Positions 17,909-55,439 are shown, numbered from the stretch's first letter. The stretch: 64,000 nucleotides of DNA from Mytilus trossulus (GCF_036588685.1 NC_086377.1:62062001-62126000), one strand, 5' to 3'. The notes: generated from the sequence alone by a model not told the origin. Program-made: numbers and translations.

Positions 17909-19242
17909 CTTGATAATCACTTCCAGCACAAACGTAAAAACAAATTCCGGTCATCAATCACAAACACTACCAGATTATGATACTGGGCAGGCGTACTTAC
18001 ATTTGTGTCCAAACCAACCAGGCAAGCACCCGGATTTACAGAACCCTGTGTTCTGATCACAAATAGTGTTTACACAATTTGAACTACAGTGTTCAGTGCA
18101 TGAAAATCCATGAAGGCCATTTTCACATTCGTATGAACAATTGTTTGCAGAATTAATACACTTTTTATTTTTACACCCGGGATAGCAGCTTTGAGTACAG
18201 GAATTTCCAAAGTATCCATCATCGCATCCAAACAAACAATTTCCATTTCCAGGGTAGCAATTTCCTCTAGACGTTCCAGCACAATTTGTACAACTATTTT
18301 CACAGTATTCGCCATATCTATTAACAACACATTGCTGTGAACATTTACCTGAATCTATATCGCATTCGTTGTTGAAACAAGTTTGTGAACATTTATTTGT
18401 GCATGATTGACCATACCACCCATTTGCACAGCCGCCATTACAGATTCCAGTTAATTTATTACAAACTACATTTCCAACTGTTGTGGACTTCGAGCAATGA
18501 CTACTACACGGACTTTGACAAATTTGCCCATAATACCCAGGTTGACATGTAGAACAAGTTCCAAATAATCTTTCACAATCTATGCAAGTGTTTACACACG
18601 GTGTTTTGCATTGAGTTCCATAAAAACCGGACGTGCAGTTATATGTGCATTCACCACTATTTCTATCACACAAATTGCCATGACAATTTTCACTACATCG
18701 TAAATTACACGTAGCACCATACCACCCCGTTACACAGTTACCTGAACAGCGTCCAGTGAGACGATCGCAGACGGAATTAATGCAATGAATTTCATTGTTA
18801 CATGGTATGTCACAGTATGTCCCATACCATCCATCTTTACAATTGTTAAGGCAATGTCCGTCTATACCGTTACAAAGTATCTGTCCAGAGGAAGACAGTC
18901 CACAGTTTGTATTACAATTGCTTTGGCAATTCAGTCCACATTTACCAGGAGCACAGCCTCCACAAGTTCAAGTTGTTTGGTTGCATAAGGTACAGGAAGA
19001 ACAGGAATTAACACAAAGCTGTCCAAATTTTCCAGGTGCACATCCATCAGAACATAATCCGGTTGTCTGATTGCATCGAGATAACTTGCAGTTATTACTG
19101 CAAATGTTTGAACAAGTATCCCCATAATAACCCTCTTTACAACTACTGCATTTCCCCGTTTGCTTATCACAAGAACTACTTAAGCAACCCATGCTACAAG
19201 TCGTATTACAATTGTTTCCATAGAAACCATCTATACACTTAC
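17909..19242 (-). pseudogene. Disabled distal half of the receptor A ectodomain exon (homologous to 54105-55439 of C)
   Basis: In-frame GGA>TGA at 18970-18968, TGC>TAA at 17977-17975, and a 1-nt deletion shortly after; the old donor CAAG|gttagg remains at 17909/17908. Confidence 0.85.
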
Positions 19243-20979
19243 CTATACATATAGCAGTCGTTTGATCACATCCTGAATTATCACATCCGGTACAAATTGT
19301 CTCACACGAATCACCAAAGTAACCAGCTTTGCATCCTCCAATACATCTACCGGATAATCGATCACATGTTGTACCTTTACAGTTACTGCTGCACGATAGC
19401 TCGCATCTAGTACCGAATTTCATGTTTGGACAATTTCCACTGCACGTTCCATCGTCCTTATTACACTGATTTGTTAAACATGACGACGGACATGACCTAC
19501 TGCAATGACTACCATGATATCCGGCAACACATTCTAACGTACATGCCCCGCTGACTTTCAGGCAGGTTCTGGGTGAGCAGTTCGCTGAACAATCTAAATC
19601 ACAGTAATCTCCATATTTGCCAGAGAGGCAATTTCCCGAACATGCGCCAGTAGTTGGGTTACAAGTATTACTGTCACAGTTCGACCCACAAGGGAGTTGA
19701 CAAAATTCCCCATAGAACCCTTGTTTGCACCCAGATGTGCACTTGCTATCTACTTGACTACATTTTTTATTTAAGCAGTTGGAGTTACAGGGTTGTAAGC
19801 AATCGTTACCATGGTATCCATCTACACAACCGGTGTCACACAAGCCAGTATTACGATTACATGTAGTTAGGCAATTAAGACATTGTAAGTCACACTGCTG
19901 GCCGTAACGTTTGCTTTTACAGCCACTACTACATATGCCATTGCTATCACACTCACCTTGGTTACAGTTAGCGGTACAATTACCTTTACATGTGTTACCA
20001 TACCAACCCGTTTTACATCCATCCGTACATGTTCCTGATGTTTTATCGCAAGAATTTAAAGTTGCACAATTATCGCTACATCTAATACATTGACCGGAGT
20101 CTAGATACCAACCAGTTTGACAGCACTCACAAACGCTCGGTTGATTTGCAACACAAGTTTCGCAATTTGGCAATGAGCAGGTAAAAGTATCGCAACGCAA
20201 TCCACTCCATCCAGCAGAACAACCAAACCGACAATTTCCAGTGTTAGGAAAGCACTTTGCTATGTTGGTGTTATTTGTTTTACAACCTCTACTACATGGT
20301 TTGCAGTAACCATTGACTCCATCATAATAATATTTCGGTTGGCATTCGGTACAGACTGTTATACCAACTGATATCAATGGTTGACATTTCGTACATAAAG
20401 TATTATTTGTCACTACCGAACAAGTTTTGTCACAACTCGGACCATAAAATCCATCTATACACCCATTTAAACATTTCCGATTGCTTTGATCGCATGTTTG
20501 TAGTCCACCATTACAATTCACGCAATAAGATGGAAAACAACTAGCTGTTTGCTGATCACATCCATATAGGCAAGAAGTTGAACACGTTGAACTACAGTCA
20601 CTTCCGTAATATCCCTTTGTACAACCTGACGTACATTGACTAGAGATTCTGTCACATTCAAAGTTAATGCATCTTATCGAACAAGACTTGTCACAATAGT
20701 TTCCCCATAGTGTTTTAGGACAACTAGTACAATATCCTAGCTGTCTGTCACATCCACATGCTAATCCAGACAGGACACATTGGTCACTGAGTGAACAGTT
20801 CTGGTTACATTCCATGTTACAGACGTCACCGAAATAACTCTTTGCGCATCCATAACATTTGCCATGCAATTGTTCACATCCACATTGACCTCCATTACTG
20901 GAGCATTCGTTTCCATAATAACACGTGGTAAAACAGTTGTACTGACAACTTCCGCCCCATACACCAGGTACACAGGTAG
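19243..20979 (-). CDS. Receptor A ectodomain exon (1737 nt, phase 1-1): multiple laminin-type EGF-like repeats, MEGF10/SCARF-like
   Basis: Open frame with repeated C..G(F/Y/W)xG..C...C...C units; acceptor gattgcag before 20979; donor AG|GTAAGT at 19243/19242. Confidence 0.82.
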
Positions 20980-21347
20980 CTGCAATCATATATAAATAAG
21001 CCTTGTTGATAACAAACCTTGGTGAAAGATGGATACAGAGCAAACAAAACCATTATAACTCATAGACGGTTATAGTTATATGTATTAACCGTTTAACCTC
21101 CATTTCAAAGATTACAAGTTTCTAATATTAAAGAAAATGTATTGGTATCTCTAAATATAATCTTTTCTAAAGAGGATTTTTCATAATATAAGTATATGGA
21201 CTCTCTAATGGTTAATAAGTACGTGTAAACCGCTAGTTGTTTTCTATATCTTATAAGAAATCATATCTTGAAAGTACAATATGTTGGAGGCGATGGCTAA
21301 TAATTTGTTGTCATATAATTGTATAGTACATATATCATATCTGTTAA

Positions 21348-22027
21348 AGGGGCACTAGCTGGCAAATCCATGGTCACCGATTTGACCCAAATTCTCATAT
21401 TTCATTGATAACAATATAAATCATTTATCCAGACTATCAAAAGTCTAAAATAAAAAATTTACAGAGCATAGGGTCGATAACATGTAGGTTCGTTTTGTGT
21501 ATATTTTAGTCCAGACGCCATCTTATTGACTATCGAGTTGACCTAATATGACCATATAAGCGATGTAAACATAAATAAAGATATAAATATATTAGACCAA
21601 CTCGTGCAAATGGATTGTTATAGTTCTGTTTGAATTTATTTTATAGTTTAAACATATATGTTTCTCATTGTTTTTACCTGTATAAGAATGGTTTTATGTG
21701 GATAGAATCAGTAATCAAATGATTTACCTTTGTTTCACTTTCATAGTTGACATTCTTGTCCTATAATAAGCAGTACACGTACAATGCATGCGTTGACAAC
21801 CTCTAGCTAGGGGTTTAAAATGAAATTCACAGGAATCAAATTTACAGATTTCGAATTATTCACTTCCAAGTGAATAATTAATCATCAATGTTTCTTAGCT
21901 TAATTTGACAAAATTGCACCGTTTTGGCTGTTAAAAGCGAATAATTATTTCACTATCCCACTTTCAGTATTGATTGACAAACAAATCGTACTTTATATTT
22001 TCTATATATCTCGAAGCTAGTGCCCCT
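21348..22027. mobile_element. TTAA-flanked non-autonomous DNA transposon (Kolobok-like)
   Basis: TTAA|AGGGGCACTAGCT ... AGCTAGTGCCCCT|TTAA. Confidence 0.88.
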
Positions 22028-22449
22028 TTAATAAATGTTGTGGCCATTTCCTGTCAATAACAATCTCGTTATTGTTCCATGAGCATCTAAGATAACTAGG
22101 ACAACTATGGATGTTTTTCAATTGTACAAACACTTGTGTTGTTAAAGACTGTATGTCTACCTAAAAATGCATGGTATCGTTTGGTTGTTGCTTCAAGGAA
22201 GTATTCTCTGAAGGTCTGAAGGATGTTTCCAGAATAGAAAATAATGATTTATAGGTGCACAAAAAAGAGTTAAAAAAAGAACAAAGGAAAATAAGGAAAA
22301 TAATTTATCGACAAAGAATAATTGGGTTCTGGTTCATAAAGCATTTACATTAACCAGGATATAGAATGGAAGATTATAGTAAAATGGAGTCAATTATTGA
22401 AGAATACAGAACATAAAAAGTCTCTATTACTCATACTTTTTAAAGTATA

Positions 22450-23197
22450 CTAGAACACACCCGTGATATCACGGGTCCATGACTGAATTAAAGTATATAA
22501 CTATGCGCAAGCTTTATTTTAATATAAGTATTGTGATCTGATAAAGTCATGCTGATTATAAGTTTTTCTCTGCTTTCAAGTCTTTCTGTTTGAACTTGTC
22601 GAACTGGAACTTATCAATTATTGGTGATACTAATTATTTAAAAAAAAAAAAAAAAGGTACTGGAATGGAGTATTTTCTAATCAACAGCATTGTCCTATGT
22701 ATATAAATAAAGTTGAATTCTTTGATTCGCTGTTTAACGTCATGCTCGCTAACAAATTGAAAACTGTACCTATACGCCTTATTTTTATTCCAGGTTTTTA
22801 GTATTCGTATTGTTATCCTAGAAAGTCTTACTGAATAAAATACTACAATAGGTAACAATTTGACAATTTAGTAGTGTCAACCCTGTGGTTATGCCCCGTG
22901 TATATAGCATTAATCCTGAATACACCGTTTGGTGGTGCGCCTGTCAGATGCGGAACGTACAGATAATGTAATAGGTAATAGGTGAATATACTATTGGTAT
23001 CAGTATCGGACTCGACCCGGAACTTCTTAATTATTGGCAATATTTAATTACGTGGAAAACAAAAGGGCCTGGAGTGGTGTAATTTTTGATCCACACCTTT
23101 GTACTATATTAGTTATATATAAAGTTGAATTCTGTGATTCTTCGTTTTTACGTGATGACGGCTGACAAATTGGACCTCGTAATTTTAGTATTATATA
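22450..23197 (-). mobile_element. Non-autonomous Helitron
   Basis: On the minus strand it ends in the 18-bp perfect palindrome acccgtgatatcacgggt (22459-22476) followed by CTAG|t. The 5' end TATATAATACTAAAAT lacks the canonical TC. Internal repeat at ~22700 and ~23115. Confidence 0.65.
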
Positions 23198-24811
23198 CTT
23201 ACACGTTATAGAAAATAAGTGGGTGAACTGTTTGTCATTATTTTTGTGGAAATCAAGACTGGATTAAATCAGATGTAACTTCTCTTATTTATATGTCAGA
23301 ATTGTATTATATTTCGTTGTTAGATTAGTCGATGGTTAATCTATCATACACATATGTGTACATTTATATGGAATAGCATGCCGTTATTCCGTTGTGTAGT
23401 ATAAATGCTTTCAAATATAAAGTCCTTTACATGTATAAGAAAAAAATAAAAAGTTAAAGAAATACCAGAATTAAACCAGCATTTGACAATGTCTGAGGAA
23501 TGGGTCTTACAAATATTTATAAGTTCAAAAAATCATCATGATCATAGCACAGCTGCATAATTTGTATTTATACATATTCAGGATTCTGAAAAAATCAACC
23601 TACTACTTAATTCAAAATGACTTTAAAATTACCTATAAGAACATAAAAAAGGTTTTAATTGTGTATGCACAGTAATTTTCACACACTTACTTTCACTTTA
23701 AATATATTTGAGGGGTAATTTCAATGATGTGAATACTGTATATGAATCATATTTTTACCTGTTTTTAAAAAAATAAGTTTCGTAACATAATTTTTTCTCG
23801 TTTGATTTGTTTATTCTACATGTTTGTTTGTTAGGTTATTTTGTAATTATTTCTATGTAATATTTCAATGTATTTTTTGAGGGCACCAGGGAAGATTATT
23901 TTATAGCTAATTGTGCAAACATCTTTTAAAAAAAAGTTATTGTTTATATAAATTTGCTTTTTTATCACATATGATTGAATACACTATCTAAACACTTAAA
24001 TAACATAAACGGTACCAATTTTCTAAAACAGAAGCGCATTTCGACGATTAAGACAATCAACAAAACTGCAGTGAGGCTCGATGGCAAAACATTTTACAAT
24101 CCAAAGCTGATTAAAAAGATAAAGAGCTATGAACCAAACAAGACAAAAAGGGATAGCCAAGGCCGGACAAGGATAAAATCTTTGCACAAGGGATATGTAC
24201 TTTTTTTATTTTTAATAATTTTCAAAATTTTGAAACAGAAATGAATCCAAATTTTTTTTTTTTGTTAATTTAATTCCACAGCCTGTTTGGTTCAAATTAA
24301 TTCATCGTGAAGATTGGGTCATCAACATACTTATACTAGTTTGATTAACGAACTCTCTCTACATATTAGTATACCCTTAATAAGGGGCCAATATCCATCT
24401 TCGTAGATTGGACGCTTCACTCAATTAAGCAATATTCTTGGTATCTGATGAAACTTAAAAAACGCCTGACTCCGGGAACTGGTGTGTTTAAGCTAGTGAT
24501 TTCGGGATTGATTATTTCGGGATCAGGGATTCCTTTTGTTCGAATTTCGGGATGTCGGGATTTAAATTTCTTTAAATTCAGGACCCCAACATTTTAAGAT
24601 CAGGACCCTCCTACCCCCTCCCCCTTTCCTGACTATATCAGAGCACCCAATTGTCAATGAAGGAGGACCGGAGTACCCGGAGAGAAGCTTCAATTTAAAT
24701 TTAAAGTATATGTGGTACTTAATACATAAGCATACTACAAAAATGCGAAACATCATACATGTACATTTATCTAACCTTAGTAAACTTATATAATTGTATC
24801 AATGAACATAC

Positions 24812-24884
24812 CATGTATCCCTATATCAAACAGTGTAATATGTAAAACGACAATTAATATTTGTGGTATCACATAACCATCCAT
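24812..24884 (-). CDS. Receptor A signal-peptide exon (MDGYVIPQILIVVLHITLFDIGIH-A)
   Basis: acaATG start, hydrophobic core, G|gtatgt phase-1 donor compatible with the 20979 acceptor. Confidence 0.7.
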
Positions 24885-26599
24885 TGTATCGAGGAAGTAC
24901 TATCAAAAGGGACGTAACTTCGTCAATTTTAGTGCAAATTACATTTCAATGTTTTGAAGTTGTTATGTATAATGTTGTGTAATGTTATGCACTAATTCAT
25001 TCCACTTTTTGTTTGTTTAATTTAATTTCGGATGACAGAAGGGGTTGATTGATGTAAATTGGTCACATTTTTTTCTTAAAGTAAATATTTACCATGTCGT
25101 CCTAAATTATGGTATTAGAAAACTGTATAAAACTTTCCTTCTAAAACCGAAAACGAACAAGAGTTGTGTCTCTTCTATCAAGGCAGAGGAAATTGTCACG
25201 GACTTAGGATATAATGTAGGTTGTATGACAAAAAATCTAACAATTAATCAAAGTCCAATGGCGTGGAATAAATGTATGAGGTTGAGGGTTTACACAAAAG
25301 GGAATAATGGGTAAATGGGCAGTATAAAATAAAAGGTAAAAAAAAATGATTTTAAAAAGTGAAAAATAGGCAAATAAAATCAAAACGAAAGTACTTGGTT
25401 TGCTGAAACATAAAGAATTGAAATAATGAAAGAATTAAAACAACCTTGTTATGTCACGTTCAAAACTCTCATATATTTGTAATTCAAAAATATGTCTTCT
25501 GTTGCATATTCTTCGACTATATTTTGTTTTATCGACCCCGTGAAGATTTGTCTTTTATTCCTCTCTACTATCATGACTATTCTTTATTGTTTTCTATTTT
25601 CTTTAATCATGAATATTTGCATACAGTGAATGATAAAAATTGATAAACTTTAAGACTAAAATACCAAAACCATAACATGGTAAGTGATAAGTCGTTCGTC
25701 CGTCCGTCTGTTCCGCTAAAGTTTTTGGTCGAGGTAGTTGTGATGAAGTTGAAGTCTAATCAACTTGAAACTTAGTACACATGTTCCCTGTGATATGATC
25801 TTTCTAATTTTAATGCCAAATTCGAGATTTCCTAAATTTTCACGGTCCCCCGAACAAAGAAAATGATAGTACGTTGTCCGTTTTTTATGCGATATTAAGT
25901 TTGAATTCTATTAGGTATCTAGTCTCCGATTTAAACATAATTATCTTCGAGTCGTAAATAGCGGTACTAATGGTATCTATTAAAGTAAAGCTAGTAAATG
26001 ATATCAATTTGTTTAAGTTTTCGTTTTGTTTTCGACACTATATTTCGACCAATCGTCAGTATTCTCTTAGTCCCTTTATATGTTTAGATTTTTCTTTCAT
26101 TATCAATTAAACCACATATACTTATATATATGTATATATTGATAACATTCGTGTCGTAATAAAAAAAACTGTATCAGAAAACACACATAATATTTGATAG
26201 ACTAAGGGCACTACCATTTTTAAAGATGTTACCATAGTGTCTTGTAAGACTTTTTGTAAAAAAAATACACTATAAATAATACAATGTTAATTTACATTAA
26301 TATTTTATTCAGTAAAAGCGAATATTATTAATAAAAAAAACACATCAAAAGTTCTGGGTTTCAACATATATCAAATTATGTATATACATTTGTACATGTT
26401 AGCAATACAACTTAAACACGGTCATAGCAGTATATTAACAAATATAATAGTATCCTCCCCTCAACGATAAATTAAACATGATTATCCTATGCTAGCTGTA
26501 AATGGTAGAACAAATGTTGTTAATTTTCAACGTATCAATATTTGAAATATAAATATCAAGAACAAATTAAATCAAAATGAGATATGATGTACAATGTAT

Positions 26600-26678
26600 T
26601 CATAATTGGCTTGTTTCTGCTAGCTCTGAGTATCTTTTTGTTGGAGTGTCTTTTGAATTACTGCTGCTTGTGTCTGAT
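26600..26678 (-). CDS. Receptor B terminal exon: SDTSSSNSKDTPTKRYSELAETSQL*
   Basis: Acceptor tatttttaacag, phase 2, stop TGA; candidate AATAAA on the minus strand near 26309-26304. Confidence 0.75.
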
Positions 26679-27763
26679 CTGTTAAAAATAAAAGCATCGA
26701 TTAATAACACAATTGCAGTTTTCTCTTCCTGCATGAGGGGCATTATTAATAATCATAATTATCATAATGATGTCTCCTTCCCTTTTTGCCATTCGGGTCA
26801 TACCTCAAGGTTTCAATTCTTATAAAAGCAATGATTATCCGTATATAACTAATATATGTTGTTAATTGGTTGGGTTTTTTCACATTTGGCTAGAAGTTCA
26901 CCAAAAATTTCCTATCAAAATAAAGCAGAGGGTACAAAACGATCTTTCCACACAAAATATCGGCTGTAACTCTGTATATATATAATACCACCAAGAGTCA
27001 GTATTCTCACTTCAGCAGAATTATTATCCTGCTTTTACTTGGAATATTTGTCAGTGTACATTAAGCATTGACAAACATTTGTTTTTTATTGAACTTTGGA
27101 CAAGACAAGACAAGACAAGACAATTTATTTCAACTTATGCACACATATGGTGCTACAAGAGGATAACAATTATACATAAACAATTACATATATACTTATA
27201 CATTTACAAGCAAGACCCACAATACATAAATTCATGATATTATACCCAAAAATATGAAATAAACCATGTTTGGTTGATTTGTTTGCAAAATTCGTATTAC
27301 TGAATAGTTGTCTCATTGTAAATCATACATTGTTCCTTATATCCTTATTTCTAGAATAATCAATCATGCAAAATCATCCAATGCTTTTAAAAAACAGACT
27401 GCACTCGTATTATACCAAATATTTGATTATTTTATGCACTAAAAATAGTGATTTTTTCAAAGTTTACTACTGTATAATTTTGTAACTATATAGTTTTTGT
27501 AAGTTTCTTGTAAGCAGTAGACCTAAACGAAAAACCAAAGAAAGAAATGTTTGAAAAGAAAAGATCATGTATATAAATGTACGTTGCAAGAGATTTTCCT
27601 CAAAAGCATATACTCCAACTTAAGGTTTTTTCAGATTTCCGATATGTCACCATTTCAAGTCGATTAAAAGATTAAGATATAGATATAGAAAGATGTTGTA
27701 TGAGTGCCAATGAGACTACTCTCCACCTATATGCATAATGCTCTTTCTGTATAATGTCCTTAC

Positions 27764-27884
27764 TTTTTTCTTCTCAAACACCAATATAATATTACGACAA
27801 GAAATATTATGACCATGACGCCACCAGCAGTAGCACCTGCAATCATGATGGTGTTGTTATCGTTGTTTTCGTTCATAGATGTAC
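27764..27884 (-). CDS. Receptor B transmembrane exon (GTSMNENNDNNTIMIAGATAGGVMVIIFLVVILYWCLRRKK)
   Basis: 121 nt, tttgtag/gtaagg boundaries, phase 1 to 2, hydrophobic helix plus RRKK. Confidence 0.9.
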
Positions 27885-28461
27885 CTACAAATGTAATATA
27901 TGATTAATTTAAAATTCCTATTTTTACAAATCTTTAGGGTTTTGCTTATGTGACTAGTTGGCCGTTTTTATAGTGATTACTTGATTACCAGATCAACTAA
28001 TTCATGGTTATTTGATCATCTAGAACTTATTATTGGTTGTCTTGTTTAAAAAAAAAATGTTATGTGATTTTTTAGGCAAATTATTTGTAATTATGTGATT
28101 ACTAGGATACACCCATGAGGTGCTTCTTTTACAAGATGTTGTATATTATTCCCAACATCAATCAAAAGATCCGAAGCAGCTTCGGATGTGGCCAGAGAAA
28201 TTGATATATATACGTACATGTAAAGTGAAAATGTTATAAATAATTTTTTATAACATTTGCAAGTATGATCACAGAAACATTAATTTTTCTATATAAGTCC
28301 GAAATATACAGCATGTACAAAAACAAACTTAAGTTTAGTCCGATGCGTTGGTCAAGCAATGACGTCGAAATATAAAAGCAAGATTACCAAAAAGCTATCC
28401 TAGAAGTTTATTATTATGCAAAAGATTTATTGATTATTTACAACAATATGACAGCAGTACA

Positions 28462-28585
28462 TCAGTGGCGGATCCATTCAGGGTTTCTGTGCTTTCAATC
28501 AATGCTTTTGAATGAGAACATTTTGTTGGAACCCACTTATAAACTGGCTTTATATCCCCTTTTGATAATGGTTGGATCTGCCCTC
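28462..28585. mobile_element. Small degenerate MITE with CAGTGGCGGATCC terminus
   Basis: cagtggcggatcca ... tggatctgccc; a related terminus (ctagatccgccactg) lies at 36831-36845. Confidence 0.5.
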
Positions 28586-29077
28586 GCGTACATAAATGAC
28601 CAAAATCAATATTCATTCAGTACAGAATAAAACACTTATCATAGATGTTGACAAAACTTGTATCCGTTTGTAACGATAAGTGTCGAACTAGTATGAGTAA
28701 AAATTATGATACAGAGGCACTCAAACGTTATATATTGCATAAGAGGAACTAAGATTTACGTATTCCTTTTTAAGGCATCATAATTCTCTATTTTGTGTAC
28801 TATTTGCTCATTATCTTGATTTAGGGTTGGGTTTTTTTTTATTTGAGCACCGAATTATTCTTTATTCTTAATTATTAAGTCTACTTTGTTCTCTGTTTTT
28901 GTAGTTTATAGTTTAAACATATTTTATTGTTCCAAAAAGAGACAAATGGATTAGACACAAGTTTTCCAACTTAGTCACGTCTTCTCCAAACTGTCACTGT
29001 TTTTTGTAGTGCCCATTTTATGTAGTTTTGACTATAATCCATTCTATAAACCCCATTCAGACCCTCCTATAAAATAC

Positions 29078-30814
29078 CTTCACATTTTCCAGTATTCTGA
29101 CTACATCCCAAAGTACCACATCCGGTACACGTGCTCTGGCAAAATGTGTCATGGTAACCAATTTTGCATCCATCAACACAGGCTCCAGTCTTTTGATGAC
29201 ATAACGTGCTTTTACAGTTACTACTACATGTTTGATCACATTTGTCGCCGAATTTGCCCTCAAAGCAATCAGTAGTACAATCTCCCTTATCCTTTTCGCA
29301 CTTGTCAGTCGGACATGAATCAGGACAAGAAACATTACAATGACTTCCAAAATACCCATCCTTGCATACTGAAGCGCATGCGCCATTTTCTTTCACGCAT
29401 AAGGGCTCTAAACACTGAGATGGACATTTTATATTGCAATTTTTGCCGTAATTTCCAGATGAACAGATCCCTATGCACGTTCCCGTCTCTACATCACATT
29501 TATTTTCGCTGCAGTTTGATCCACAGGAAAGATGACAAAATTTCCCATAATACCCCTCTTCACATCCGCCTGAGCATTGCCCATTGCTTTGATCACACTG
29601 ATTTCCAAAGCAGGTATCATTGCATAATTGTTGACAATCGTCACCGTGATAAGTATCTATGCAACCAGACTCACAAAACCCAGTCTGCTGGTCGCATGCA
29701 ATCTTGCAATTGTTACACATTGTATCGCAATTTTTTCCATAACGTTTTCCAACGCATCCCTCAGTACAGTTGCCATTTACATCACACTTTCTATTCAAAC
29801 AGTTCGAAGCACATGCATGTAAACATTTAAGACCATACCAACCGTTCTTGCATCCATTCGTACAAGTTCCAGAAGCTGCGTCACATTCATTTGCAACTGC
29901 GCAGTTGGTATTGCATTCTACGCAGTTTCCAGATTCAACAAACCATCCATTTTCGCAACGAGCACATACTTGTGATTGATCATAAACACAAGAGTCACAA
30001 TTCGCAACGGTACAATCGCATTTCGATCCGATCCAATTCGATAAGCATCCAAACCGACAAATTCCTGTTTTTGGAAAGCACGTGGATAAAGACGTCACGT
30101 TTGAACTGCAACCTGTGCTACATACCTTACATTTCTTGCTGGACATGTCGTAAAAATATCCTGACTGACATTCTTCACATACGGTTAGAGTTACAATAGG
30201 TGTACTGATGTGTCTACAATTGGTACATTTTGACACCCCCGTTTCTTCTGCGCATGTCTTATCACACGTTTCCCCACTAAATCCCGTAATACATCCGGAT
30301 TTACATTTCTGTGTGACGTTATCACATCCTGACATTCCCTTGATACAGTTGATACAATATGGCGGGAAACATTCCGCCGTCTGCCGATCGCATCCACTTT
30401 GACAAGACAAAGAACATACCGAAGAACAGTCGCTCCCATAAAACCCCTTTAAACAACCGAAAGTACAAATACCATCAATCCAGCTACATTCGGAATTGAT
30501 GCAATTATCGGAACACTTATTTTCACAGTAACTACCCCATGTTGATTTTGGACACCTGTTGCAGTTACCTTGTTCTCTGTCACAGCCGCAAGCAAATTCA
30601 AAGCCGTCCTGTACACATTGTTCATTAAGAGAACAAATATCATCGCATTTTATATCACATGAAACACCATAAAAGTTGGTAGAGCATTCATAGCACGTGC
30701 CATTAGTTTGCATGCATCCACATTGACCGCCATCGGAGCAGGTGTTTCCATGGTAACAAGAGGAGGAACAGTTGTACTGGCAGTTACCTCCCCATTTTCC
30801 TAGATTGCATTGAG
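29078..30814 (-). CDS. Receptor B ectodomain exon (1737 nt, phase 1-1), multi-EGF MEGF10/SCARF-like; full protein ~663 aa
   Basis: Open Cys-rich frame colinear with A and C; acceptor gttttaag; donor GAAG|gtattt with an in-frame stop three codons into the intron. Confidence 0.88.
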
Positions 30815-35612: not shown

Positions 35613-35679
35613 ATGGAGAAATTATTGATTTGTGTTTTAAGTTTGTTTGGAATTATTTTATTAATTGGATTTTCGAAAG
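35613..35679 (+). CDS. Receptor C signal-peptide exon (MEKLLICVLSLFGIILLIGFSK-A)
   Basis: acaATGG context, hydrophobic core, AAG|gtaagt phase-1 donor compatible with the 52368 acceptor; implies a ~16.7-kb intron. Confidence 0.75.
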
Positions 35680-45554: not shown

Positions 45555-45690
45555 TAAGTATTGAATGCTTCTTTTTGTAACTTCATATGGTTGTAAATGC
45601 CGGTTGATCGAGTGCATTCATGCAAAATGTACTTCGGTCAACGCTTTTACAACCTAATAAAGTTACAAAAAGAAGCATTCAATTCTTAAA
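45555..45690. repeat. Long imperfect inverted repeat in a probable non-autonomous element (~45350-45690)
   Basis: ttgaatgcttctttttgtaactt ... aagttacaaaaagaagcattcaa. Confidence 0.75.
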
Positions 45691-48600
45691 TAATCTTAAT
45701 GTGATTTTTTTCGTTCGTCATATTAGTTTTTCAAGCATTACTGTCAAGTCATAACCAGTTCAATAGTTTGATGGATGAAATCGGATCAGAAATTTCGTAT
45801 TGTATGTTCACATGACCGTCTTGATCTTTTTGTGGTTATAAACACTATTTAAGATATTTTTAATACTACAACCAATATTTGAAAATAAGACTGAAGAATC
45901 TGCAACAATCATTTCAGTGCATGTACGGTGTACAAAAATACATAGGATGTAATTCAAACTCGTTTGAAGTAACTTAATATAAAATAAAATGATTGATTCT
46001 ATCTCATCTGATTATGCATAATGCATGTGAATGAATTGCATATAGGTGCAAATACATGTCACCGGATTTGAAACTCTGCCAATTTATATATATTTAAACA
46101 TTTCAGTATTTATATTTAATGTCCTTAAATATATTTGAATAACAGAAAAAAGATATGGCCCTTTTGTGAATATGAATGGAGCTTTCGAATTTTAAACTGC
46201 TTTTAACTTAAAGATGAAATCAAATGAAATCTGCTCTTTTAAAGATAGAAAGTGTTGTATTTACTAGATATCACTTTGTATTCATCTGGTATTCGTCCTT
46301 GAATTTATGAAGAAGGAAAAATGCCAAAATAGCTACTAGTATCTCTTTTACGATCGACTTTTAAGTCTTATTAGTCGGTAATATTTAATTTGTATTGTAA
46401 ACTTAAAGGAAGACAGAATAGTTTTTGTTGGGATGAGGAAGTGTTTTTTTTTTGTGTTTTTTTTAGGGGGGGGGGTAAAAAAAATAACAATGAGGAATAA
46501 AAAAGCCTTTTATTGTTAAAGAAATAAATAGATTTATATGTTGGATTGTTTGCATTGATGAAGCCATAAAAAGATTGAGAGCGTCACTGAGAGTGGGGAA
46601 AATGGGGGGGGGGGGGGGGGGGAGGGGGGTCATTTAACGCTGAGCAAAATAATAGTGCCCCGAGATATCTGTGAAGTTTATTCAAGCTTAAAAAAAATCT
46701 AAATTATTTATATAAGACTTTTAAGACATATTACTCTTAAGCTTGCAAATGAGCTACTATCAACTAAAAAAACCCACAAACATGGAAGTTAACTACAACA
46801 GGTCATCAATTTTTGTATGCTAATATTATCGAATATTCTTATGAGCTGATCCCTGGGTTATTACTACCACTGATTATTGAGTGTTGGTTGCTCAACGTCC
46901 AGTGGCAGATATTTCATGCACGTTCATGACGTTATTACTATAAGTGAGAATAAACTGAAAACTAGTTTTAAAAAATAATTTACATTGAAAAGCGTGATTT
47001 TTTTTTAATTTCTTTTTGCTTTTCATTGTGCGTAACATGTAGGTATTGTATTAGTCTTGTACAACATTTGATTAATTAGGCTCTGTCAAAAAGGGCACAA
47101 AAATCTCTACACGTTCAAGAACATATGCAAAAACATTTGTGCATGTCCATATTCGGGGACCAGTTGCAAAGCATATCTTCATCCCGTTTTCATCATAGTC
47201 TTTTTCTAGTGACAGTCCTTCCGACATGGCAAAAAAAACTTTCTTGATTTATTATTAATAGGTATAGACAGATGTTGTTTTAGTGCCAATGAGAACACTC
47301 TCCATTCAAATCACAATTTATAGAAGTAAACCATTTTAGGTCAAGTAACGGTCTTCAATACGGAGCCTTGGCTCACACCGAACAGCAAGCTATAAACATG
47401 AGAAAAGGCCCAAAACATTACTAGTGTAAAACCATTTAAATGGGGAAACCAACGGTCTAATTTATATAAAAAAAGAAACACTTATGAATCACATCAACAA
47501 ACTACAACTACTGAATTTGTGTTTTTGTTTGTTTTCGTATTGACCATGCTTGAAATATTAGCCACTGGAAGATCAAACAATAATGCCGCAGTAAAATCTA
47601 CCATTTCAAATATTTTTGAGTGGCATAATTTAGATAAAAAGTGAAGTTTTACTTCCTTTCGAGGAAAGTTTGATTAAGCGTTCTCCTGTTCCCTTCAAAC
47701 AAAGGCTGGATAGAAAATAAACAAAGATAAAATGAAATATTAGTTTTGAATCACGTATCACATTTTAAGCAAATATTAAATATTTGCGTCAATCATACAT
47801 TGCGATATGCAAAAGGGTGACGCCCCCTTCATGAAGAAAAACAAACACCTATTTGTTAACTGGAATATTATTGAACCATTTAACTTTTAATTACGATATA
47901 AATATTTTATCTATCTGATAACAATTTTGAGCAGCTTAAAGGTTTTTCCGTTCTAAATGATACTTAAAGTTTGTTTAATTGTCTAGTATGCTCTGTGGAA
48001 TTATTAAGAAATTAAGTAAATATTTTTCTAGCATGATTGGCTAGAAAATAAATACTTCATAAAGTTCGTTCGTCCGACACAAAGCTTATTTGAAAATTCG
48101 CCAAATTAATGGGTGCATTTGTTTAAAGATTCAGAAATGAACTGTTTGTGTTTGTCAGGAAGTAATATAGATATCATTTGCTAAAAATGATTATAAAGAA
48201 TTGTTTTATAAATATTTTAAACGTTTAAATATTGTATAATAGAATATGGAAATTAGGGAAATGTCAGAGACAACTACCTGAACAAAGAGCAGAAAACAAC
48301 TTAAGGTCACCGGTCTTTAGCACAGGGAGGAAATCCTGCACCAAAAGGCTGACTTCAAATGACCCCTTAACAATAACTTATATTGTAAATTAGGAGATCA
48401 TGTGGTATGAGTGCAAATAAGACAACTCTTTCATCCAAGTCACATTTTTTTTAAAAAGGAAACAATTTTAGTTCAGCGAAAAAGACACTAGACTTAACTT
48501 CGAAATATACCAATGAACCAAAATTTGAAGAAGAAAAAACAGCCTAACAAAGACTAGAAGTTCCTGATTTGGGACAGGCACAACATGTAGGTTCGATCAC

Positions 48601-48937
48601 GTTATGTTAGATCTCGGTTTGTGAATATAAAAATGAAGATTTGGTATGATTCCCAATGAGACTACTCTCCACAAGAGACCAAATGACACAGAAATTAACA
48701 ACTATAGGTCACCGTACAGCCTTCAATAATAAGCAATATCTATACCGCATAGTCAGCTTTAAAAGTTTGCTTTCTTTTACGTTAAACATGTATATTGTGC
48801 ACATGTATATAATGTTAGTCCGGATATTTGTTTACCTTCAAAAACAAACACAATGCATTCCCCTTTTATAAATTTAAATGATAATTTGACAGAGGAATGT
48901 CAACAAGACAAGACAAGCTTGACAGTTACTTTTACTT

Positions 48938-48995
48938 TAAATCACACGAGAACAAGATAAATCACACGAGAACAAGATAAATCACACGAGAACAA
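48938..48995. repeat. 20-bp tandem repeat, ~3 copies
   Basis: The unit atcacacgagaacaagataa is repeated. Confidence 0.9.
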
Positions 48996-51900
48996 CAGAC
49001 AGTAATCGAATACCCTCAAATTATAGATCGGAATAAAAACGTTTTGGTTAAGTAACCGTGTTAAAATGTAAATTATTTTCACCCAGTATTTCAAAAGGTT
49101 AACCGTATGGCAAAATTGAATTGCGATAAGTTCGAAATAGTAGTAATTTACGAGTTTTTGTAAATAGGTATGAATTCATTTTAAAAACATTTTTGTACGA
49201 ATCTCGTTTTGTTTACACATTTTTTTATGTATAAAGAAATTTGTGGACGTTGATGAAGCAAAGAATTTATTGGTTAAACTAAGATTGATATGGCGTAAAA
49301 TTATGTGATATCTTTTAGATGACATAGGTTAACCCATCAAAAAGTAAATTTCCAATCAACTATAATTCACAGACATTTGCAAAGCCTCGGATCTGACAAG
49401 TCTGGACAAAAAAAATATTGGTTATTTGTACAAAATACGATTTCCAAGGATCCAGAATAATAAAGAAAAGACAACCTTATGTAGTTTTATATATACATAT
49501 AATCTATTACTACCCTGTCATTTTAATTGCAACAAAAGGGGACGATAGTTGCACTACCTGCCCCCGACACCAATATAAATTTATACCACCAGTGCACTGG
49601 TGCGATTCTGTCTTGTTGACGCATTAGCTTTAACAAATAGTACTTCCTTACAAATAATATATATCGAAGTTTACATACTCAGCTCTGTACATACTGTCAT
49701 CGTTTACCTGGACAAAAATATAGCAATTTACTTTAATTAGCAATAAATCTAACTTTGTCGTCCTGTGATCAGATAAGAGTTATCTTTCCTTGTATCAAAC
49801 ATTTATGTCCAATTAAACTAACGTATCTATTGATCTCGTTTAACCTCAGGTGAATATAATGGTTTTCTTAAAGCTCCGTGTATTTATACTTTTTTAAAGG
49901 AATTGTCCATTCAAAAGAGATAACTATTCTTTAGCGTGAATCTTGTTATTTACATTTAAGTTTTAAAAGGACTAATGACAAAAAATATATAAACAAACAT
50001 ACACACGTACAAATTCTAAGTACCTCTGAAGATCAAACAGTCAACAATTAATTATACAAAATATGCTGCGTAAGATTAAATTCGACATTATGTAAATACA
50101 TGTGAAAACATCTGTAATAACCTAATTTTTGTTGAAATTTGTAACTGTTCTGAGAATTAGGTTGTTAAAACTACTAGATACAAAACAGAGCGATGTCCAT
50201 CTTTTGGGCAAATCAATCAAATTGCATTTTGCCAATTTCTATCCCTTCTGATATTAAAAGCGTAAAGCTATGGAATTTTAGATATATTAAATCTGTATTT
50301 TACCAGAAGACATATATACAACATGTCTCGTCCTGATCTTGCGTCAATTTTTTTCAACTGGACGTTAAACAACCACCAATCGATCAATCAATCATAAAAC
50401 ATCATGGTTATCGAGGATTGGCTGACTGAGTGTTCATCAGTATCGGTACATACTCATTTGGTAAAATATATAAAAGTACAATTGGGGTTCAGTGCAATCC
50501 AGTTGAATGTTTAATACACCTTTACAAAACGTGCACGAGATTGAAAGTATTGGTACAGAGCAAAACACAAAACAACAGCTTTAAAATTGCTTCATTTAGA
50601 CATAATAACATGCTATTTTTACTTCAAATTCTATTTTATAGATTATCATTATGGTTTTCTAAAATATTTGGCGAGATGTTATGATTGTGGTAATTTCTCA
50701 TCTGATATTAAAGTAAATATTTAGTAGCAATATTTCATACGATGTCATCTTGTCAAGATAGAATGATCGTCCGTAATTACAAATCTGCCCTGAGGTCAAA
50801 TTGGGTTTCAGACAAATTACTGCTATAACAGATTTCTCGATAGATTGAACGTCTATCAAGTGATTTAGAGTTGCAGTGGCTCTCGGTGATCAAGTTAGAA
50901 TAGCTTCGTTGGCTGTATTGCGATTTGCCATCAACGGAACCATGGAATTCCAGAGTGCTGCAATGCATACATCTTCCTTATAGAAAGAAGTCCAACGGCT
51001 TAAAATATTTCTTATATTTTTTTTAAGATTCAAATATTGCTACTTTATTTTGTCGACTTACGATTTTTAGGGATACACAGCCATGTATTTTATTGATTGC
51101 GCGAGACACATGTAATATCTTTAATTTTCATTGTAAAATATTCAATTTTTTGTTAGGAGCGTTTCTTCATGAAAAAATTTCGTATACTACGTAACTGGAA
51201 TTTATTTAGATGGAAGATTTATTGTTGAATTTCAAACTTTGTCCGGGTTTTTTTACCAGAGCATAGCATAAAAAGTAAAATCACAAAATACTGAACTTAG
51301 AGGAAAATCAATTCGGAAAGTCCATAATCACATGGCAAAATCAAATAAAAAAACGCATCAAAAACGGATGGACAAGAACATATCATAGCATATCATGGTA
51401 GTAACATTTGTAAGTTTTACACGAGGGTATGGATGGCAGAGTCTCCATAACTGTATTCGTTTTTTATGAGGGTCGCTATTATTCTCTATTCTTAATATTT
51501 GTTACCATTTCGATCTACATCTTTTGCGCATTATTTTCGATTCTGTAAAACCCCATGCAACCCTCTCACAGGTGTATGTCTAAAGTATGTTTTAAAATGT
51601 TCCATACAACTGAAGCTCGCAGAACGTGTTTTTGAAAGATTGGAATTATTCTAAACATTTCATAAAATATATCTATTAGTGAAATTTTATATAAAATGCT
51701 ATATTAATAAAGGAAAAACAATTGAAATACTTATTTTTCGTGTATCCGACTGTTGATTCCGGAATTAAAAAAAATGATAGATAACATAATCTGTAATGGG
51801 ACATTCTGTTACTCGGTCAAGTTAGAGCAACCGTAAGAGCAACTAAAAGAAGTAAATCAAACATATAATAGGTTCAATTTAGCAGAAGGGATACTGTTTT

Positions 51901-52367
51901 CATATGTTGTTGTGGCTTTTAAAAAAAACATAAAACAGTACTGTTCCGATTGTAAGCCAAATTGTACTTCTTAATGTTGGTCTTAGTTGACCGAGTATCA
52001 AGATGTCCTGTCACAGAGAATTAACCTGTCGAAAAAATATAAACTTCAGGGTCAAAAGTCGGTAATATAAAATATTCTTTTACAAGATAAAGAATCTCAA
52101 AAGTGTTTGAAAATTCAATTATTCCGGAACTCGTAAGATTACTAGCGACAATGGTTAGTGTTTTATAGACATAAAATGGAGTACAAAACGTATTAATCCT
52201 GGTATCTATTATGATCTATGATTAGTTAAATAACACAAGTTCCTATAAGATAGTTTGAAGTATAGAACAGCACGACACATTTGCATTCATCCTTCATTTA
52301 TGAATAAACATTCCTAGGTAATTCACAATTTTTTATAACCACTAAACTTCTTTCTATATAATTGTAG

Positions 52368-55300
52368 CTGCCTGTGGTTATGGTGTATGGGGCGAAATTT
52401 GTCAGTACAACTGTTCTACCACGTGTTATTATGGAAACGAATGCTCAATTAATGGTGGCAAATGTGGATGTGAACAATTGCATGGAAACTGTTACGACTG
52501 CGCAAAGAATTATTTTGGTGACGTCTGTAATAAGGCATGTAACCAGAACTGTTCACTCAGTGACCAATGTGTCCTGTCTGGATTAGCATGTGGATGTGAT
52601 AGACAGCTAGGAAATTGTACTAGTTGTCCTAAAACACTATGGGGCAATTATTGTGACAGGTCTTGCTCGATAAGATGCATCAACATGGAATGTCATAGAA
52701 CTTCAGGCCAATGTACGTCTGGTTGTAAAAAGGGTTATTATGGAGGTGATTGTAGTTCCCAGTGTTCAACTACTTGCCTATATGGTTGTGATCAGCAAAC
52801 AGCTGTATGTTTTCCATCTTACTGCGTGAACTGTAATGGTGGACTACCAAAATGCGATCAAAGCAATCGGAAATGTTTGAATGGGTGCATAGATGGATTT
52901 TTTGGTCCCAGTTGTGACAAAACTTGTTCTGTAGTGACAAATAATACTTTATGTACGAAATGTCAACCATTGATATCAGTTGGTATAACTGTCTGTACGG
53001 AATGTCAACCGGAATATTATTATGATGGCGTTATTGGCGAATGCAAAACTTGTAGTACAGGTTGTAAAACAAATAACACCAACATAGCAAAGTGCTTTCC
53101 TAACACTGGAAACTGTCGGTTTGGTTGTTCTACGGGATGGAGTGGACTGCGCTGCGATACGTTTACCTGCTCATTGGCAAATTGCGAATCTTGTGTTGCG
53201 AATCAACCGACGGTTTGTGAGCGCTGCCAAGCCGGCTGGTATCTAAACTCCGGTCAGTGCGTTAGATGTAGCGATAATTGTGCGACCTTAAATTCTTGCG
53301 ATACAACATCAGGAAAATGCACGGGTGGATGTAAAACGGGTTGGTATGGTAACACATGTAAAGATAATTGTACCACAAACTGTAACCAAGGTGAGTGTGA
53401 TAGCAATGGCATATGTAGTAGCGGCTGTAATGACAAACGTTACGGTCAGAAATGTGACTTGCAATGTCCTAATTGCTTAACTACATGTAATCGTAATACT
53501 GGCTTATGTGATGCCGGTTGTGTGAACGGATACCATGGTAACGATTGCTTACAACCCTGTAACTCCAAATGCTTAAATAATAAATGTAGTCAAGTAGATA
53601 GCAAGTGTTCCTCAGGGTGCAAACAGGGGTTCTATGGGGAATTTTGTCAACTCCCTTGTGGGTCAAACTGTGACGGTAATAGTTGTAACCCAACAACCGG
53701 AGCATGTTCGGGAAATTGCCTCTCTGGCAAATATGGTGATTACTGTGATTTAGATTGTTCAGCAAACTGTTCACCCAGAACTTGCATAAAAGTGGGTGGT
53801 GCATGTACGTCAGATTGTGTTGCCGGATATCATGGTAGTCATTGCAGTAGGACATGTCCGTCGTCATGTTCAACAAATCAATGTAATAAAGATGATGGAA
53901 CGTGCAGTGGCAATTGTCCAAACATGAAATTCGGAACGAGATGTGAGCTATCGTGCAGCAGTAACTGTAAAGGTACATCATGTGATCAATTATCCGGTAG
54001 ATGTGTGGGAGGATGCAAAACTGGTTACTATGGTGATTCTTGTGAGAAAATTTGTACCGGATGTGATAATTCAGGATGTGATCAAACGACTGCTGTTTGT
54101 ATAGGTAAGTGTATAGATGGTTTCTATGGAAACAATTGTAATACGACTTGTAGCATGGGTTGCGTTAGTAGTTCTTGTGATAAGCAAACGGGGAAATGCA
54201 GTAGTTGTAAAGAGGGTTATTATGGGGATACTTGTTCAAACATTTGCAGTATTAACTGCAAGTTATCTCGATGTAATCAGACAACGGGAGTATGCTCGGA
54301 AGGATGCGCACCTGGAAAATTTGGACAGCTTTGTGATAATTCCTGCTCTTCCTGTACCTTATGCAATCAAACAACCGGAACTTGTGAAGGTTGTGCTCCT
54401 GGAAAATATGGACTGAATTGCCAAAGCAATTGTAATACAAATTGTGGTCTGTCTCCCTCTGGACACATAATTTGTGACGGTATTGATGGATATTGCCTAA
54501 ATAGCTGTAAAGATGGATGGTATGGAACATACTGTGACATACCTTGTAACAATGAAATTCATTGCATAAGTTCTACCTGCGATCGTCTCAATGGACGATG
54601 TTCAGGTAACTGTGTTACGGGATGGTACGGTGCTACGTGTAATTTACGATGTAGTGAAAATTGTTTTGGCAATTTGTGTGATAGGGATAGTGGTGAATGC
54701 ACATATAACTGCACGTCTGGTTTTTATGGCACTCAATGCAAAACACCTTGCGTAAACACTTGCACAGATTGTGAAAGATTATTTGGAACTTGTTCTACAT
54801 GTCAACCTGGGTATTATGGGCAAAATTGTCAAAGTCCGTGTAGTAGCCATTGCTCGAAGTCCTCAACAGTTGGAAATGTAGTTTGTAATAAATTAACTGG
54901 AATCTGTAATGGCGGTTGTGCAAATGGATGGTATGGTCAATCATGCACAAATGAGTGTTCACAGACCTGTTTCAACAGTGAATGCGACATAGATTCCGGT
55001 AAATGTTCACAGCAATGTGTTGTTGATAAATACGGCGAATATTGTGAAAATAGTTGTACCAATTGTGCTGGAACTTCGGGAGGAAATTGCAACCCTGGAA
55101 ATGGAAATTGTTTGTTTGGATGTGACAATGGATACTTTGGAAATTCCTGTACTCAAAGCTGCTATCCCGGATGTAAAAATAAAAAGTGCGTTTATTCCTC
55201 AAACAATTGTTCATATGGATGTGAAAATGGCCTATATGGATTCTCATGCACTGAATCATGTAATACAAATTGTCAAAACAATATGTGTGATCAGAAAACA

Positions 55301-55439
55301 GGGTTCTGCACATCTGGGTGCAGGCCTGGTTGGTTTGGAGAGAAATGTAAGTACGCCTGTCCAGTTTCATGCTCTGGTAGTGTTTGTGATCAGGTGACCG
55401 GAAGTTGTGTTGACGTTTGTGCCGGAAGTGATTGTCAAG
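52368..55439 (+). CDS. Receptor C ectodomain exon (3072 nt, 1024 codons, phase 1-1; alternative short form 52368-54104), roughly 25 EGF-like repeats
   Basis: Uninterrupted Cys-rich frame; acceptor aattgtag; distal donor CAAG|gtttga where the Cys pattern ends; internal AG|GTAAGT at 54104/54105. Confidence 0.9.

What the first reader, a model, noticed from the sequence alone, without database searches (positions are those of the whole stretch)
17909..55439. A shared donor 1737 nt into the ectodomain exon: a length switch caught at three stages of intronization
Seen: acceptor-to-donor distance is exactly 1737 nt in A (20979-19243, AG|GTAAGT), B (30814-29078, AG|gtattt) and C (52368-54104, AG|GTAAGT), always phase 1 and in frame with the TM exon. 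The following 1335 nt are intact in C, hold all of A's stops and its frameshift, and are absent in B. The cut falls after four Cys that can pair 1-3 and 2-4 in a laminin-type EGF unit. Inference: A is not a pseudogene but a ~679-aa short-form receptor, and C may make 579- and 1024-codon ectodomains. That could matter for size-dependent exclusion of a phosphatase from contact zones, as known for CD45 isoforms.
Basis: partly seen in the sequence, partly recalled or inferred. Interest (0 to 1): 0.85.

Follow-up and report, generated by a model that had tools for sequence, protein, structure and literature searches.

The report
Mussel receptor ectodomain length switch
A mussel (Mytilus) receptor tyrosine phosphatase gene has one 3-kb EGF-repeat exon with several in-frame internal splice donors that transcripts really use to make short and long ectodomains, and a neighbouring copy without a phosphatase seems to keep only the short form; the isoforms already stand in automatic RefSeq gene models, so this is a good example of a known process, not a new one.

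Summary
Gene C (+ strand) is a complete Mytilus receptor tyrosine phosphatase.

RNA-type contigs from independent studies join three donors to the TM exon at 57794:
- 54104, in three runs;
- 55439, in two runs;
- 55346, in one run.

RefSeq models of M. edulis, M. galloprovincialis and M. californianus carry ectodomains of 341, 579, 993 and 1024 codons, so the switch is a ladder of nested donors, not a two-way choice.

Copy A is a mosaic. It has its own signal and TM exons and no phosphatase, and its homology to C stops 21 nt before and 56 nt after the exon. All its lesions lie after the 1737 donor. Its M. californianus orthologue is modelled as a 683-aa protein spliced at exactly that donor.

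- A-C dN/dS is equal on both sides of the donor (0.195 and 0.189).
- B's 1737 nt comes from compensating indels.
- B holds no remnant of the distal part.
- Phase 1 follows from the Cys/Gly codon make-up.
- The number of GTRAGT hexamers is what chance gives.

A and C ectodomain heads group by species, not by type (AU p 0.001). This points to gene conversion, which confounds the dN/dS test. Use of A's donor in this genome and any role of ectodomain size were not tested.

The parts
35613..35679 (+). Gene C exon 1: start codon and signal peptide, donor AAG|GTAAGT, phase 1
   Evidence: Read. Matches the N-termini of P0001, P0006 and P0185. A loose end of an X1 contig joins this exon's last letters to the start of the ectodomain exon (table 7).
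52368..55439 (+). Gene C ectodomain exon: 3072 nt, open, 184 Cys, EGF-like repeats of about 32 residues. Terminal donor AAG|GTTTGA matches only 6 of 9 consensus positions.
   Evidence: Joint 55439 to 57794 in X4 and X6. A 1233-nt X19 contig covers 54117-55349 with 3 differences. Long RefSeq isoform P0185.
53388..53396 (+). Internal donor 1 of C, AAG|GTGAGT; the exon would end at 53390 (1023 nt, 341-codon form)
   Evidence: RefSeq isoforms P0006-P0010 of three Mytilus species join here to the TM exon. No such joint was seen in the four runs laid.
54102..54110 (+). Internal donor 2 of C, TAG|GTAAGT; the exon ends at 54104 (1737 nt, 579-codon form). This is the donor of the finding.
   Evidence: Joint 54104 to 57794 in X19, X4 and X6. 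P0001-P0004, P0207 and the transcript-borne P0005 are all joined at '...CIG|TTI...'.
55344..55352 (+). Internal donor 3 of C, AAT|GTAAGT; the exon ends at 55346 (2979 nt, 993-codon form). The split Cys codon is restored by the GT that starts the TM exon.
   Evidence: Joint 55346 to 57794 in X1. M. edulis isoforms X8 and X10 (P0192, P0193) and M. galloprovincialis X5 (P0200) end here.
57794..57914 (+). Gene C transmembrane exon, 121 nt, phase 1 to 2; the common acceptor of all the donors
   Evidence: Target of all three joints, and a loose end leads on to the next exon.
61570..61637 (+). Gene C juxtamembrane mini-exon
   Evidence: Its letters match the loose-end consensus behind 57915 in all four runs. 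92% identical to P0001.
63126..63463 (+). Gene C juxtamembrane exon with proline-rich motifs. The two phosphatase domains follow beyond the window.
   Evidence: 95-97% identical to Mytilus receptor phosphatases. Exons for P0185 residues 1222-1793 lie in the 21.4 kb after the window. PF00102 is found twice in P0185.
24812..24884 (-). Gene A exon 1: start codon and signal peptide, donor ATG|GTATGT, phase 1
   Evidence: Read. 62% identical to the N-termini of P0038 (M. edulis) and P0196 (M. californianus, 683 aa).
19243..20979 (-). Gene A proximal ectodomain: 1737 nt, open, 104 of 104 Cys kept. Internal donors AAG|GTGAGT (exon end 19957) and TAG|GTAAGT (exon end 19243).
   Evidence: dN/dS against C is 0.195.
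17909..19242 (-). Gene A distal part, 1334 nt: TGA at 18970-18968, TAA at 17977-17975, a 1-nt deletion near 17957, and the last Cys changed to Tyr. Otherwise 91% identical to C with 78 of 80 Cys kept. Probably intronic in A.
   Evidence: dN/dS against C is 0.189.
12746..12866 (-). Gene A transmembrane exon, 121 nt, phase 1 to 2, donor GTAAGT
   Evidence: 48% identical to the TM segment of P0196 (E 4e-7). Unlike C's TM exon.
29078..30814 (-). Gene B ectodomain exon, 1737 nt, open, ending AAG|GTATTT at the site homologous to the internal donor of A and C
   Evidence: P0039 is 90% identical. No EGF-like remnant follows the donor.
27764..27884 (-). Gene B transmembrane exon, 121 nt, 1193 nt after the donor

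Best explanation
Three tandem paralogues of a Mytilus EGF-repeat receptor family share one plan: a signal exon, one giant phase 1-to-1 ectodomain exon, and a 121-nt TM exon.

Gene C is a complete receptor tyrosine phosphatase with two catalytic domains. The terminal donor of its 3072-nt ectodomain exon is weak (GTTTGA). Three strong internal donors (GTGAGT at 53390, GTAAGT at 54104, GTAAGT at 55346) compete with it for the same TM-exon acceptor. The result is ectodomains of 341, 579, 993 or 1024 codons. The variable N-terminal head is kept in all of them, and a more conserved stalk next to the membrane is dropped. Use of 54104, 55346 and 55439 is shown here; use of 53390 is shown only in RefSeq models.

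Gene A is a non-catalytic twin. It has its own signal and TM exons and a short tail, but its ectodomain exon is exchanged with C's by gene conversion. By inference from its orthologue, A splices at 19243 (or at 19957). Its last 1334 nt are then a passenger, and they have begun to collect stops and a frameshift.

Gene B is an older paralogue in which the same site is the only exon end.

Whether ectodomain length tunes the phosphatase's access to cell contacts is inference only.
For: - Joints with GT..AG ends in RNA-type contigs: 54104 to 57794 in X19, X4 and X6; 55439 to 57794 in X4 and X6; 55346 to 57794 in X1. The intron is almost uncovered and the contig depths are comparable.
- RefSeq and ENA models carry the same junctions in M. 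edulis, M. galloprovincialis and M. californianus. So does P0005, a 1338-aa protein only 64% identical, encoded on a 4446-nt contig that must therefore be a transcript.
- The three GTRAGT hexamers of the exon are exactly the three internal donors that have evidence.
- All four forms have an even Cys count.
- C continues into two PTP domains beyond the window.
- A-C homology is confined to 52347-55495 against 21000-17854. The signal and TM exons of A and C are unlike each other.
- The 683-aa A orthologue is spliced at the 1737 site.
- The data reject a single clade of A-type heads (AU p 0.00095), and the M. californianus A and C heads pair with each other.
- The stalk is more conserved than the head in C and in its M. 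edulis orthologue: 2.3-2.7% against 4.0-4.7% lineage-specific changes.
Against: - The joint-bearing contigs have only 24-30 letters on their shorter side. That is what k=31 unitigs give at a branch, but it is below the tool's 31-letter rule.
- The runs are marked 'RNA?' (a guess).
- Contig depth is a poor measure of isoform ratio.
- No joint from 53390 was seen in the four runs.
- No reads were laid on A, and its tail exons were not found in the window.
- A's distal part is hardly decayed (78 of 80 Cys kept; dN/dS 0.189), so it was constrained or refreshed until recently.
- The donor hexamers are no more frequent than chance.
- RefSeq models are automatic predictions.
- The A-type group for the AU test was defined by the flanking exons, but it was tested after the tree had been seen.
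Confidence: 0.7

Rival explanations
1. Splicing noise. The internal donors are chance GTRAGT hexamers in a Cys/Gly-rich exon. They are used because they are strong and happen to be in frame, and the shorter proteins have no selected role.
For: The hexamer count of 3 is close to the 2.0 expected from synonymous shuffles. 73% of GT dinucleotides are phase 1 by composition. No tissue or condition pattern was tested.
Against: Depth of the short joint is equal to or above that of the long joint, and X19 shows only the short joint. The same junction is found in a relative only 64% identical (P0005) and is the fixed exon end in paralogue B and in the A orthologue. All four forms keep an even Cys count.
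Confidence: 0.15
2. A is simply a dead copy: an exon-sized duplicate of C's ectodomain exon that is not expressed as any receptor. The fact that its lesions all lie after nt 1737 is chance.
For: A has two stops, a frameshift and a lost Cys. Three lesions all falling in the distal 43% of the exon has chance probability 0.08. dN/dS is equal on both sides. There is no RNA test in this genome. The tail after the TM exon was not found. Older M. edulis and M. coruscus models of A-like copies (P0038, P0041) run out of frame.
Against: A's start codon, signal exon, 579 codons with all 104 Cys, both strong internal donors and the TM exon with its splice sites are intact. The orthologous 683-aa RefSeq protein in M. 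californianus has the same exon joins.
Confidence: 0.25
3. Reverse polarity. The short exon ending at nt 1737, as in B, is ancestral, and the 1335-nt stalk was added later in the A/C lineage. On this reading the series shows exon extension, not intronization.
For: B has no remnant of a distal part. The site is an exon end in B, in the A orthologue and in P0005. In this genome the distal part exists only in C and A.
Against: Phosphatase receptors of outgroup bivalves (Pinctada P0011, scallops P0052 and P0186) align over 97-99% of the query with ectodomains of about 970 residues or more. Adding 445 in-frame EGF codons directly after a working donor is hard to picture.
Confidence: 0.25

Closest known systems
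CD45 (PTPRC) ectodomain isoforms
   Same: A receptor tyrosine phosphatase whose ectodomain length is set by alternative splicing while the catalytic part is unchanged. From general knowledge, size is thought to affect exclusion from close cell contacts.
   Different: CD45 uses cassette exons that encode mucin-like segments. Here nested alternative 5' donors inside one EGF-repeat exon remove the stalk next to the membrane. The ectodomains are not homologous, and no functional test exists.
Alternative 5' splice-site choice, and 'intronization' of coding sequence
   Same: Several GT donors in one exon share one acceptor. In paralogue A the skipped part carries stops, as expected once a stretch is always spliced out.
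   Different: The donors are no commoner than chance. A's skipped part is still 91% identical to C's, probably because gene conversion refreshes it. The order of events among A, B and C is unproven.
MEGF10 / Draper / CED-1 and SREC-type multi-EGF receptors
   Same: Arrays of Cys-rich EGF-like units, a single TM segment and a short tail. RefSeq names the A orthologue 'cell death abnormality protein 1-like'.
   Different: No EMI domain and no Pfam EGF family passes threshold. C carries two PTP domains instead of an NPxY/ITAM tail. The names come from automatic annotation.
Vertebrate paired receptors (for example SIRP alpha/beta, KIR, PILR)
   Same: Neighbouring genes share a near-identical, co-evolving ectodomain head but have different signalling parts. 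The head clusters by species, not by gene type.
   Different: Here the heads are EGF-like rather than Ig or lectin folds. One partner is a phosphatase and the other has a short tail of unknown function. No ligand is known.

Membership tests
Alternative 5' splice-site event | Two or more donors of one exon are joined to the same acceptor in transcripts | tested here: met
   Joints 54104, 55346 and 55439 to 57794, all with GT..AG ends.
Alternative 5' splice-site event | The alternative products coexist in one sample | tested here: met
   X4 and X6 each hold both the 54104 and the 55439 joint.
Alternative 5' splice-site event | The reading frame is kept in every product | tested here: met
   All the donors used are phase 1.
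Receptor-type protein tyrosine phosphatase (Pfam PF00102) | Signal peptide, TM segment and catalytic PTP domain in one gene | tested here: met
   For C: signal and TM exons lie in the window. Exons 80-100% identical to residues 1222-1793 of P0185 lie just beyond it, and P0185 holds PF00102 twice (E 5e-132). For A and B: not met, with no PTP hit on the minus strand between 1 and 27700.
Intronization (exon sequence turned into intron) | A stretch that is coding in one copy is always spliced out in a homologous copy | tested here: inconclusive
   The A orthologue P0196 is modelled with the 1737 join. No reads were laid on A in this genome.
Intronization (exon sequence turned into intron) | Relaxed constraint on the stretch that is spliced out | tested here: inconclusive
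   Stops and the frameshift occur only distally and 2 of 80 Cys are lost. But dN/dS is 0.189 distally against 0.195 proximally, and the polarised counts give p 0.12.
Laminin-type / Pfam EGF domains | Match to a curated EGF family above its threshold | tested here: not met
   No Pfam family for the ectodomains of C, A and B or for P0196. EGF_TEN scores only 16 bits against a cut-off of 65. The Cys spacing is EGF-like by eye only.
Paired receptors kept alike by gene conversion | Ectodomains group by species while the flanking exons group by gene type | tested here: met
   The M. californianus A and C heads pair (support 83/80). A single clade of A-type heads is rejected (AU p 0.00095). A-type signal and TM exons are shared across species. 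Only the first 340 residues were tested, on protein models.
CD45-like size-dependent segregation | Ectodomain length changes the receptor's position at contacts or its signalling | not testable with these tools

The most novel reading that the evidence does not exclude
C and A form an invertebrate 'paired receptor'. A phosphatase and a tail-less twin have a hypervariable EGF head that is kept matched by gene conversion. The phosphatase partner sets its reach by choosing among nested donors that remove a conserved stalk (341, 579, 993 or 1024 codons). This would be a size-based tuning of phosphatase access that arose independently of CD45.
Probability: 0.15. Interest if true: 0.7.

Novelty: new member of a known kind. 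Interest (0 to 1): 0.45.

Why it matters
This is a well-documented case of one giant repeat exon acting as a length ladder for a receptor phosphatase, with paralogues that fix the short state. It gives a testable invertebrate counterpart to CD45 size isoforms, and a natural series for studying how coding sequence becomes intron while gene conversion keeps refreshing it. The isoforms are already in RefSeq models, and alternative donor choice is routine biology. The value therefore lies in the comparative picture and in the possible paired-receptor arrangement, not in a new mechanism.

Tried and rejected
- Remnants of the distal part after B's donor: none found. tblastn of 187 relatives against 29077-27889 gave only noise, as in nine control stretches. 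Nucleotide alignment of 29077-28878 to 54105-54304 gave z -0.5, against z 37 for the exon control. Earlier tblastn extensions past the donor were therefore taken as noise.
- Relaxation of A's distal part: pairwise dN/dS is equal on both sides. The three-way amino-acid patterns were not significant.
- Enrichment of donors: none found.
- An outgroup for the distal part in this genome: only C and A match at E below 1e-30. The best representative elsewhere is a broken M. coruscus model, 62% identical.
- Cytoplasmic exons shared by A, B and C: none found by tblastx.
- A-derived contigs among the laid reads: they cannot be told apart. 17 of 38 listed variants equal A's base and 18 do not.
- Literature: two searches found no paper on this gene family's isoforms, and one call failed on syntax.
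Exons were searched apart, by reference.
The window holds no N.


Full report
**What the window is.** The window is AT-rich animal DNA (about 32% G+C) with no N. Its proteins match Mytilus best, and the genome is 1.30 Gb. Three copies of a giant Cys-rich exon lie at 20979-17909 (A, minus strand), 30814-29078 (B, minus strand) and 52368-55439 (C, plus strand).

**The observation.**
- TAG|GTAAGT, with the exon ending at 19243 (A) and at 54104 (C);
- AAG|GTATTT, with the exon ending at 29078 (B).

The exon lengths are 3071, 1737 and 3072 nt, each behind a good acceptor. C is open throughout. A aligns to C without gaps except for one missing base at exon nt 3023. It carries TGA at 18970-18968 and TAA at 17977-17975.

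Several details need qualifying:
- B is only 52% identical in protein to A and C. It reaches 1737 nt through indels of -1, +2, +2 and -3 codons, so the end point is homologous but the equal length is a coincidence.
- Phase 1 comes free with the composition. 207 of 284 GT dinucleotides of the exon are phase 1, because they sit in TGT and GGT codons.
- The exon holds three GTRAGT hexamers, against 2.0 expected after synonymous-codon shuffling (P 0.33).

**Gene C.** Exon-by-exon matches to Mytilus proteins give this structure:
- signal exon 35613-35679;
- ectodomain exon;
- TM exon 57794-57914;
- mini-exon 61570-61637;
- exon 63126-63463.

I fetched the 30 kb beyond the window. Exons 80-100% identical to residues 1222-1793 of the M. 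edulis protein P0185 lie in its first 21.4 kb. P0185 carries Pfam PF00102 twice. C is therefore a complete receptor tyrosine phosphatase.

**Is the donor used?** I laid contigs of four runs from four studies on window:52300-57950 (5651 letters). The runs are marked 'RNA?'. The exons are covered, and the intron is almost bare in X1, X4 and X6. Three joints with GT..AG ends appear:

| Joint | Runs (contig depth) |
|---|---|
| 54104 to 57794 | X19 (22.9), X4 (8.4), X6 (9.6) |
| 55439 to 57794 | X4 (9.1), X6 (10.4) |
| 55346 to 57794 | X1 (25.7) |

- Short and long forms thus coexist in X4 and X6 at comparable depth.
- A 1233-nt contig of X19 covers 54117-55349 with three differences, where A would differ at 106 places. 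So C's distal part is itself transcribed.
- The short side of each joint contig is 24-30 letters. That is what unitigs of word length 31 give at a branch, but it is a caveat.
- The joints cannot come from A, because A's TM exon is unrelated to C's.

**Gene models agree and extend the picture.** The M. edulis RefSeq isoforms fall into four groups:
- X14-X17 (1332-1359 aa) join '...CIG' to the TM exon, giving the 579-codon form.
- X18-X21, with M. galloprovincialis X6 and M. californianus X6, join after '...CNQG', at the perfect donor AAG|GTGAGT (exon end 53390). This gives the 341-codon form.
- X8 and X10 end at 55346, giving the 993-codon form.
- X1-X4 (about 1792-1804 aa) carry all 1024 codons.

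M. galloprovincialis X7 points to one more donor near 54605. P0005 is only 64% identical and sits on a 4446-nt contig, so it comes from a transcript. It has the same '...CIG|TTI...' junction. The three GTRAGT hexamers of the exon are exactly the three internal donors with evidence. The terminal donor, GTTTGA, is weak. All four forms keep an even number of Cys: 60, 104, 178 and 184.

**Gene A.**
- A-C similarity (90.5% nt) is confined to 52347-55495 against 21000-17854. That is the exon plus 21 and 56 nt of flank.
- A has its own signal exon (24884-24812) and its own 121-nt TM exon (12866-12746). Both are unlike C's.
- No phosphatase or C-like tail lies downstream.
- The proximal 579 codons are open, with 104 of 104 Cys kept. 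The distal part has lost 2 of 80 Cys, and all lesions lie there.
- The cluster of P0185 also holds XP_052084204.1 of M. californianus (P0196, 683 aa, 'cell death abnormality protein 1-like'). It has the A-type signal peptide, the proximal ectodomain and the junction 'VCIG|SQV'. Its TM segment is 48% identical to A's TM exon (E 4e-7).

- Between A and C, dN/dS is 0.195 proximally and 0.189 distally.
- I polarised the amino-acid changes with the M. edulis long isoform. A-only changes against C-only plus E-only changes are 39 to 50 proximally and 31 to 22 distally (Fisher p 0.12).
- The test is probably confounded. In a tree of the first 340 ectodomain residues the M. californianus A and C heads pair (support 83/80). 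The A and C heads of the edulis group mix freely.
- Holding the four A-type heads together costs 37.8 log-likelihood units (AU p 0.00095). Yet the flanking signal and TM exons are type-specific across species.

This is the signature of exon-wide gene conversion between A and C. Such conversion would carry the unused distal part along and keep it looking constrained.

**Gene B.** Its exon ends at the homologous residue. A 1193-nt intron follows, then a 121-nt TM exon at 27884-27764. I found no remnant of a distal part by protein or by DNA comparison. B's tail region also holds no phosphatase.

**Reading.**
- Shown: C uses nested donors to make ectodomains of several lengths.
- Inferred: A is a non-catalytic twin spliced at 19243, and its distal 1334 nt are a passenger that has recently begun to decay.
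- Inferred: B has the short state fixed.
- Not shown: the order long to optional to short. Long ectodomains in Pinctada and scallop relatives favour it.
- The optional part is the more conserved stalk next to the membrane. Lineage-specific changes are 2.3-2.7% there, against 4.0-4.7% in the head.
- A size effect on phosphatase access, as proposed for CD45, is analogy only.

**Novelty.** Two literature searches found no paper on this. The isoforms already stand in RefSeq models of three species, and alternative donor choice and intronization are known processes. I rate the finding as a new member of a known kind, of moderate interest. The paired-receptor aspect is the part most worth following.

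**Limits.**

Noticed in passing
window 52368-53390, compared with 53391-55439: The first 340 ectodomain residues are hypervariable. Two M. edulis models differ by 10.6% and two M. galloprovincialis models by 9.1% there, against about 3-5% in residues 341-578. X19 contigs are about 94% identical to the window in the proximal part but 99.8% identical in the distal part.
   Followed up: partly
window 21000-17854 and 52347-55495: The ectodomain heads of A and C group by species, not by gene type (AU p 0.00095), while their signal and TM exons are type-specific. This points to gene conversion between a phosphatase receptor and its tail-less neighbour.
   Followed up: partly
window 3211-4329 (-): An intact 372-aa ORF with an AIG1/GIMAP-type GTPase domain (Pfam PF04548, E 3e-49). 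It is a separate gene downstream of A.
   Followed up: no
window 9152-9898 (+): A 248-aa ORF with no Pfam match and a glycine-rich C-terminal stretch, lying in the region where A's tail exons would be expected.
   Followed up: no
window 54155 and 54605: M. galloprovincialis RefSeq isoforms X5 and X7 start inside the distal part, at the equivalent of 54155. X7 leaves the exon near 54605 (CAG|GTAACT). This suggests an internal start and a fifth donor.
   Followed up: no
window 59141-59660 and 59751-60235: A tandem duplication of about 610 nt inside an intron of C; near-identical ORFs are listed twice.
   Followed up: no
window 47250-47400 and 48625-48765, with copies at about 1930, 16400, 17100, 17650, 34100, 36900, 40700, 43400, 44100 and 44600: Short dispersed repeats, 75-85% identical, scattered through the introns and intergenic DNA. 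They are probably SINE- or MITE-like elements.
   Followed up: no
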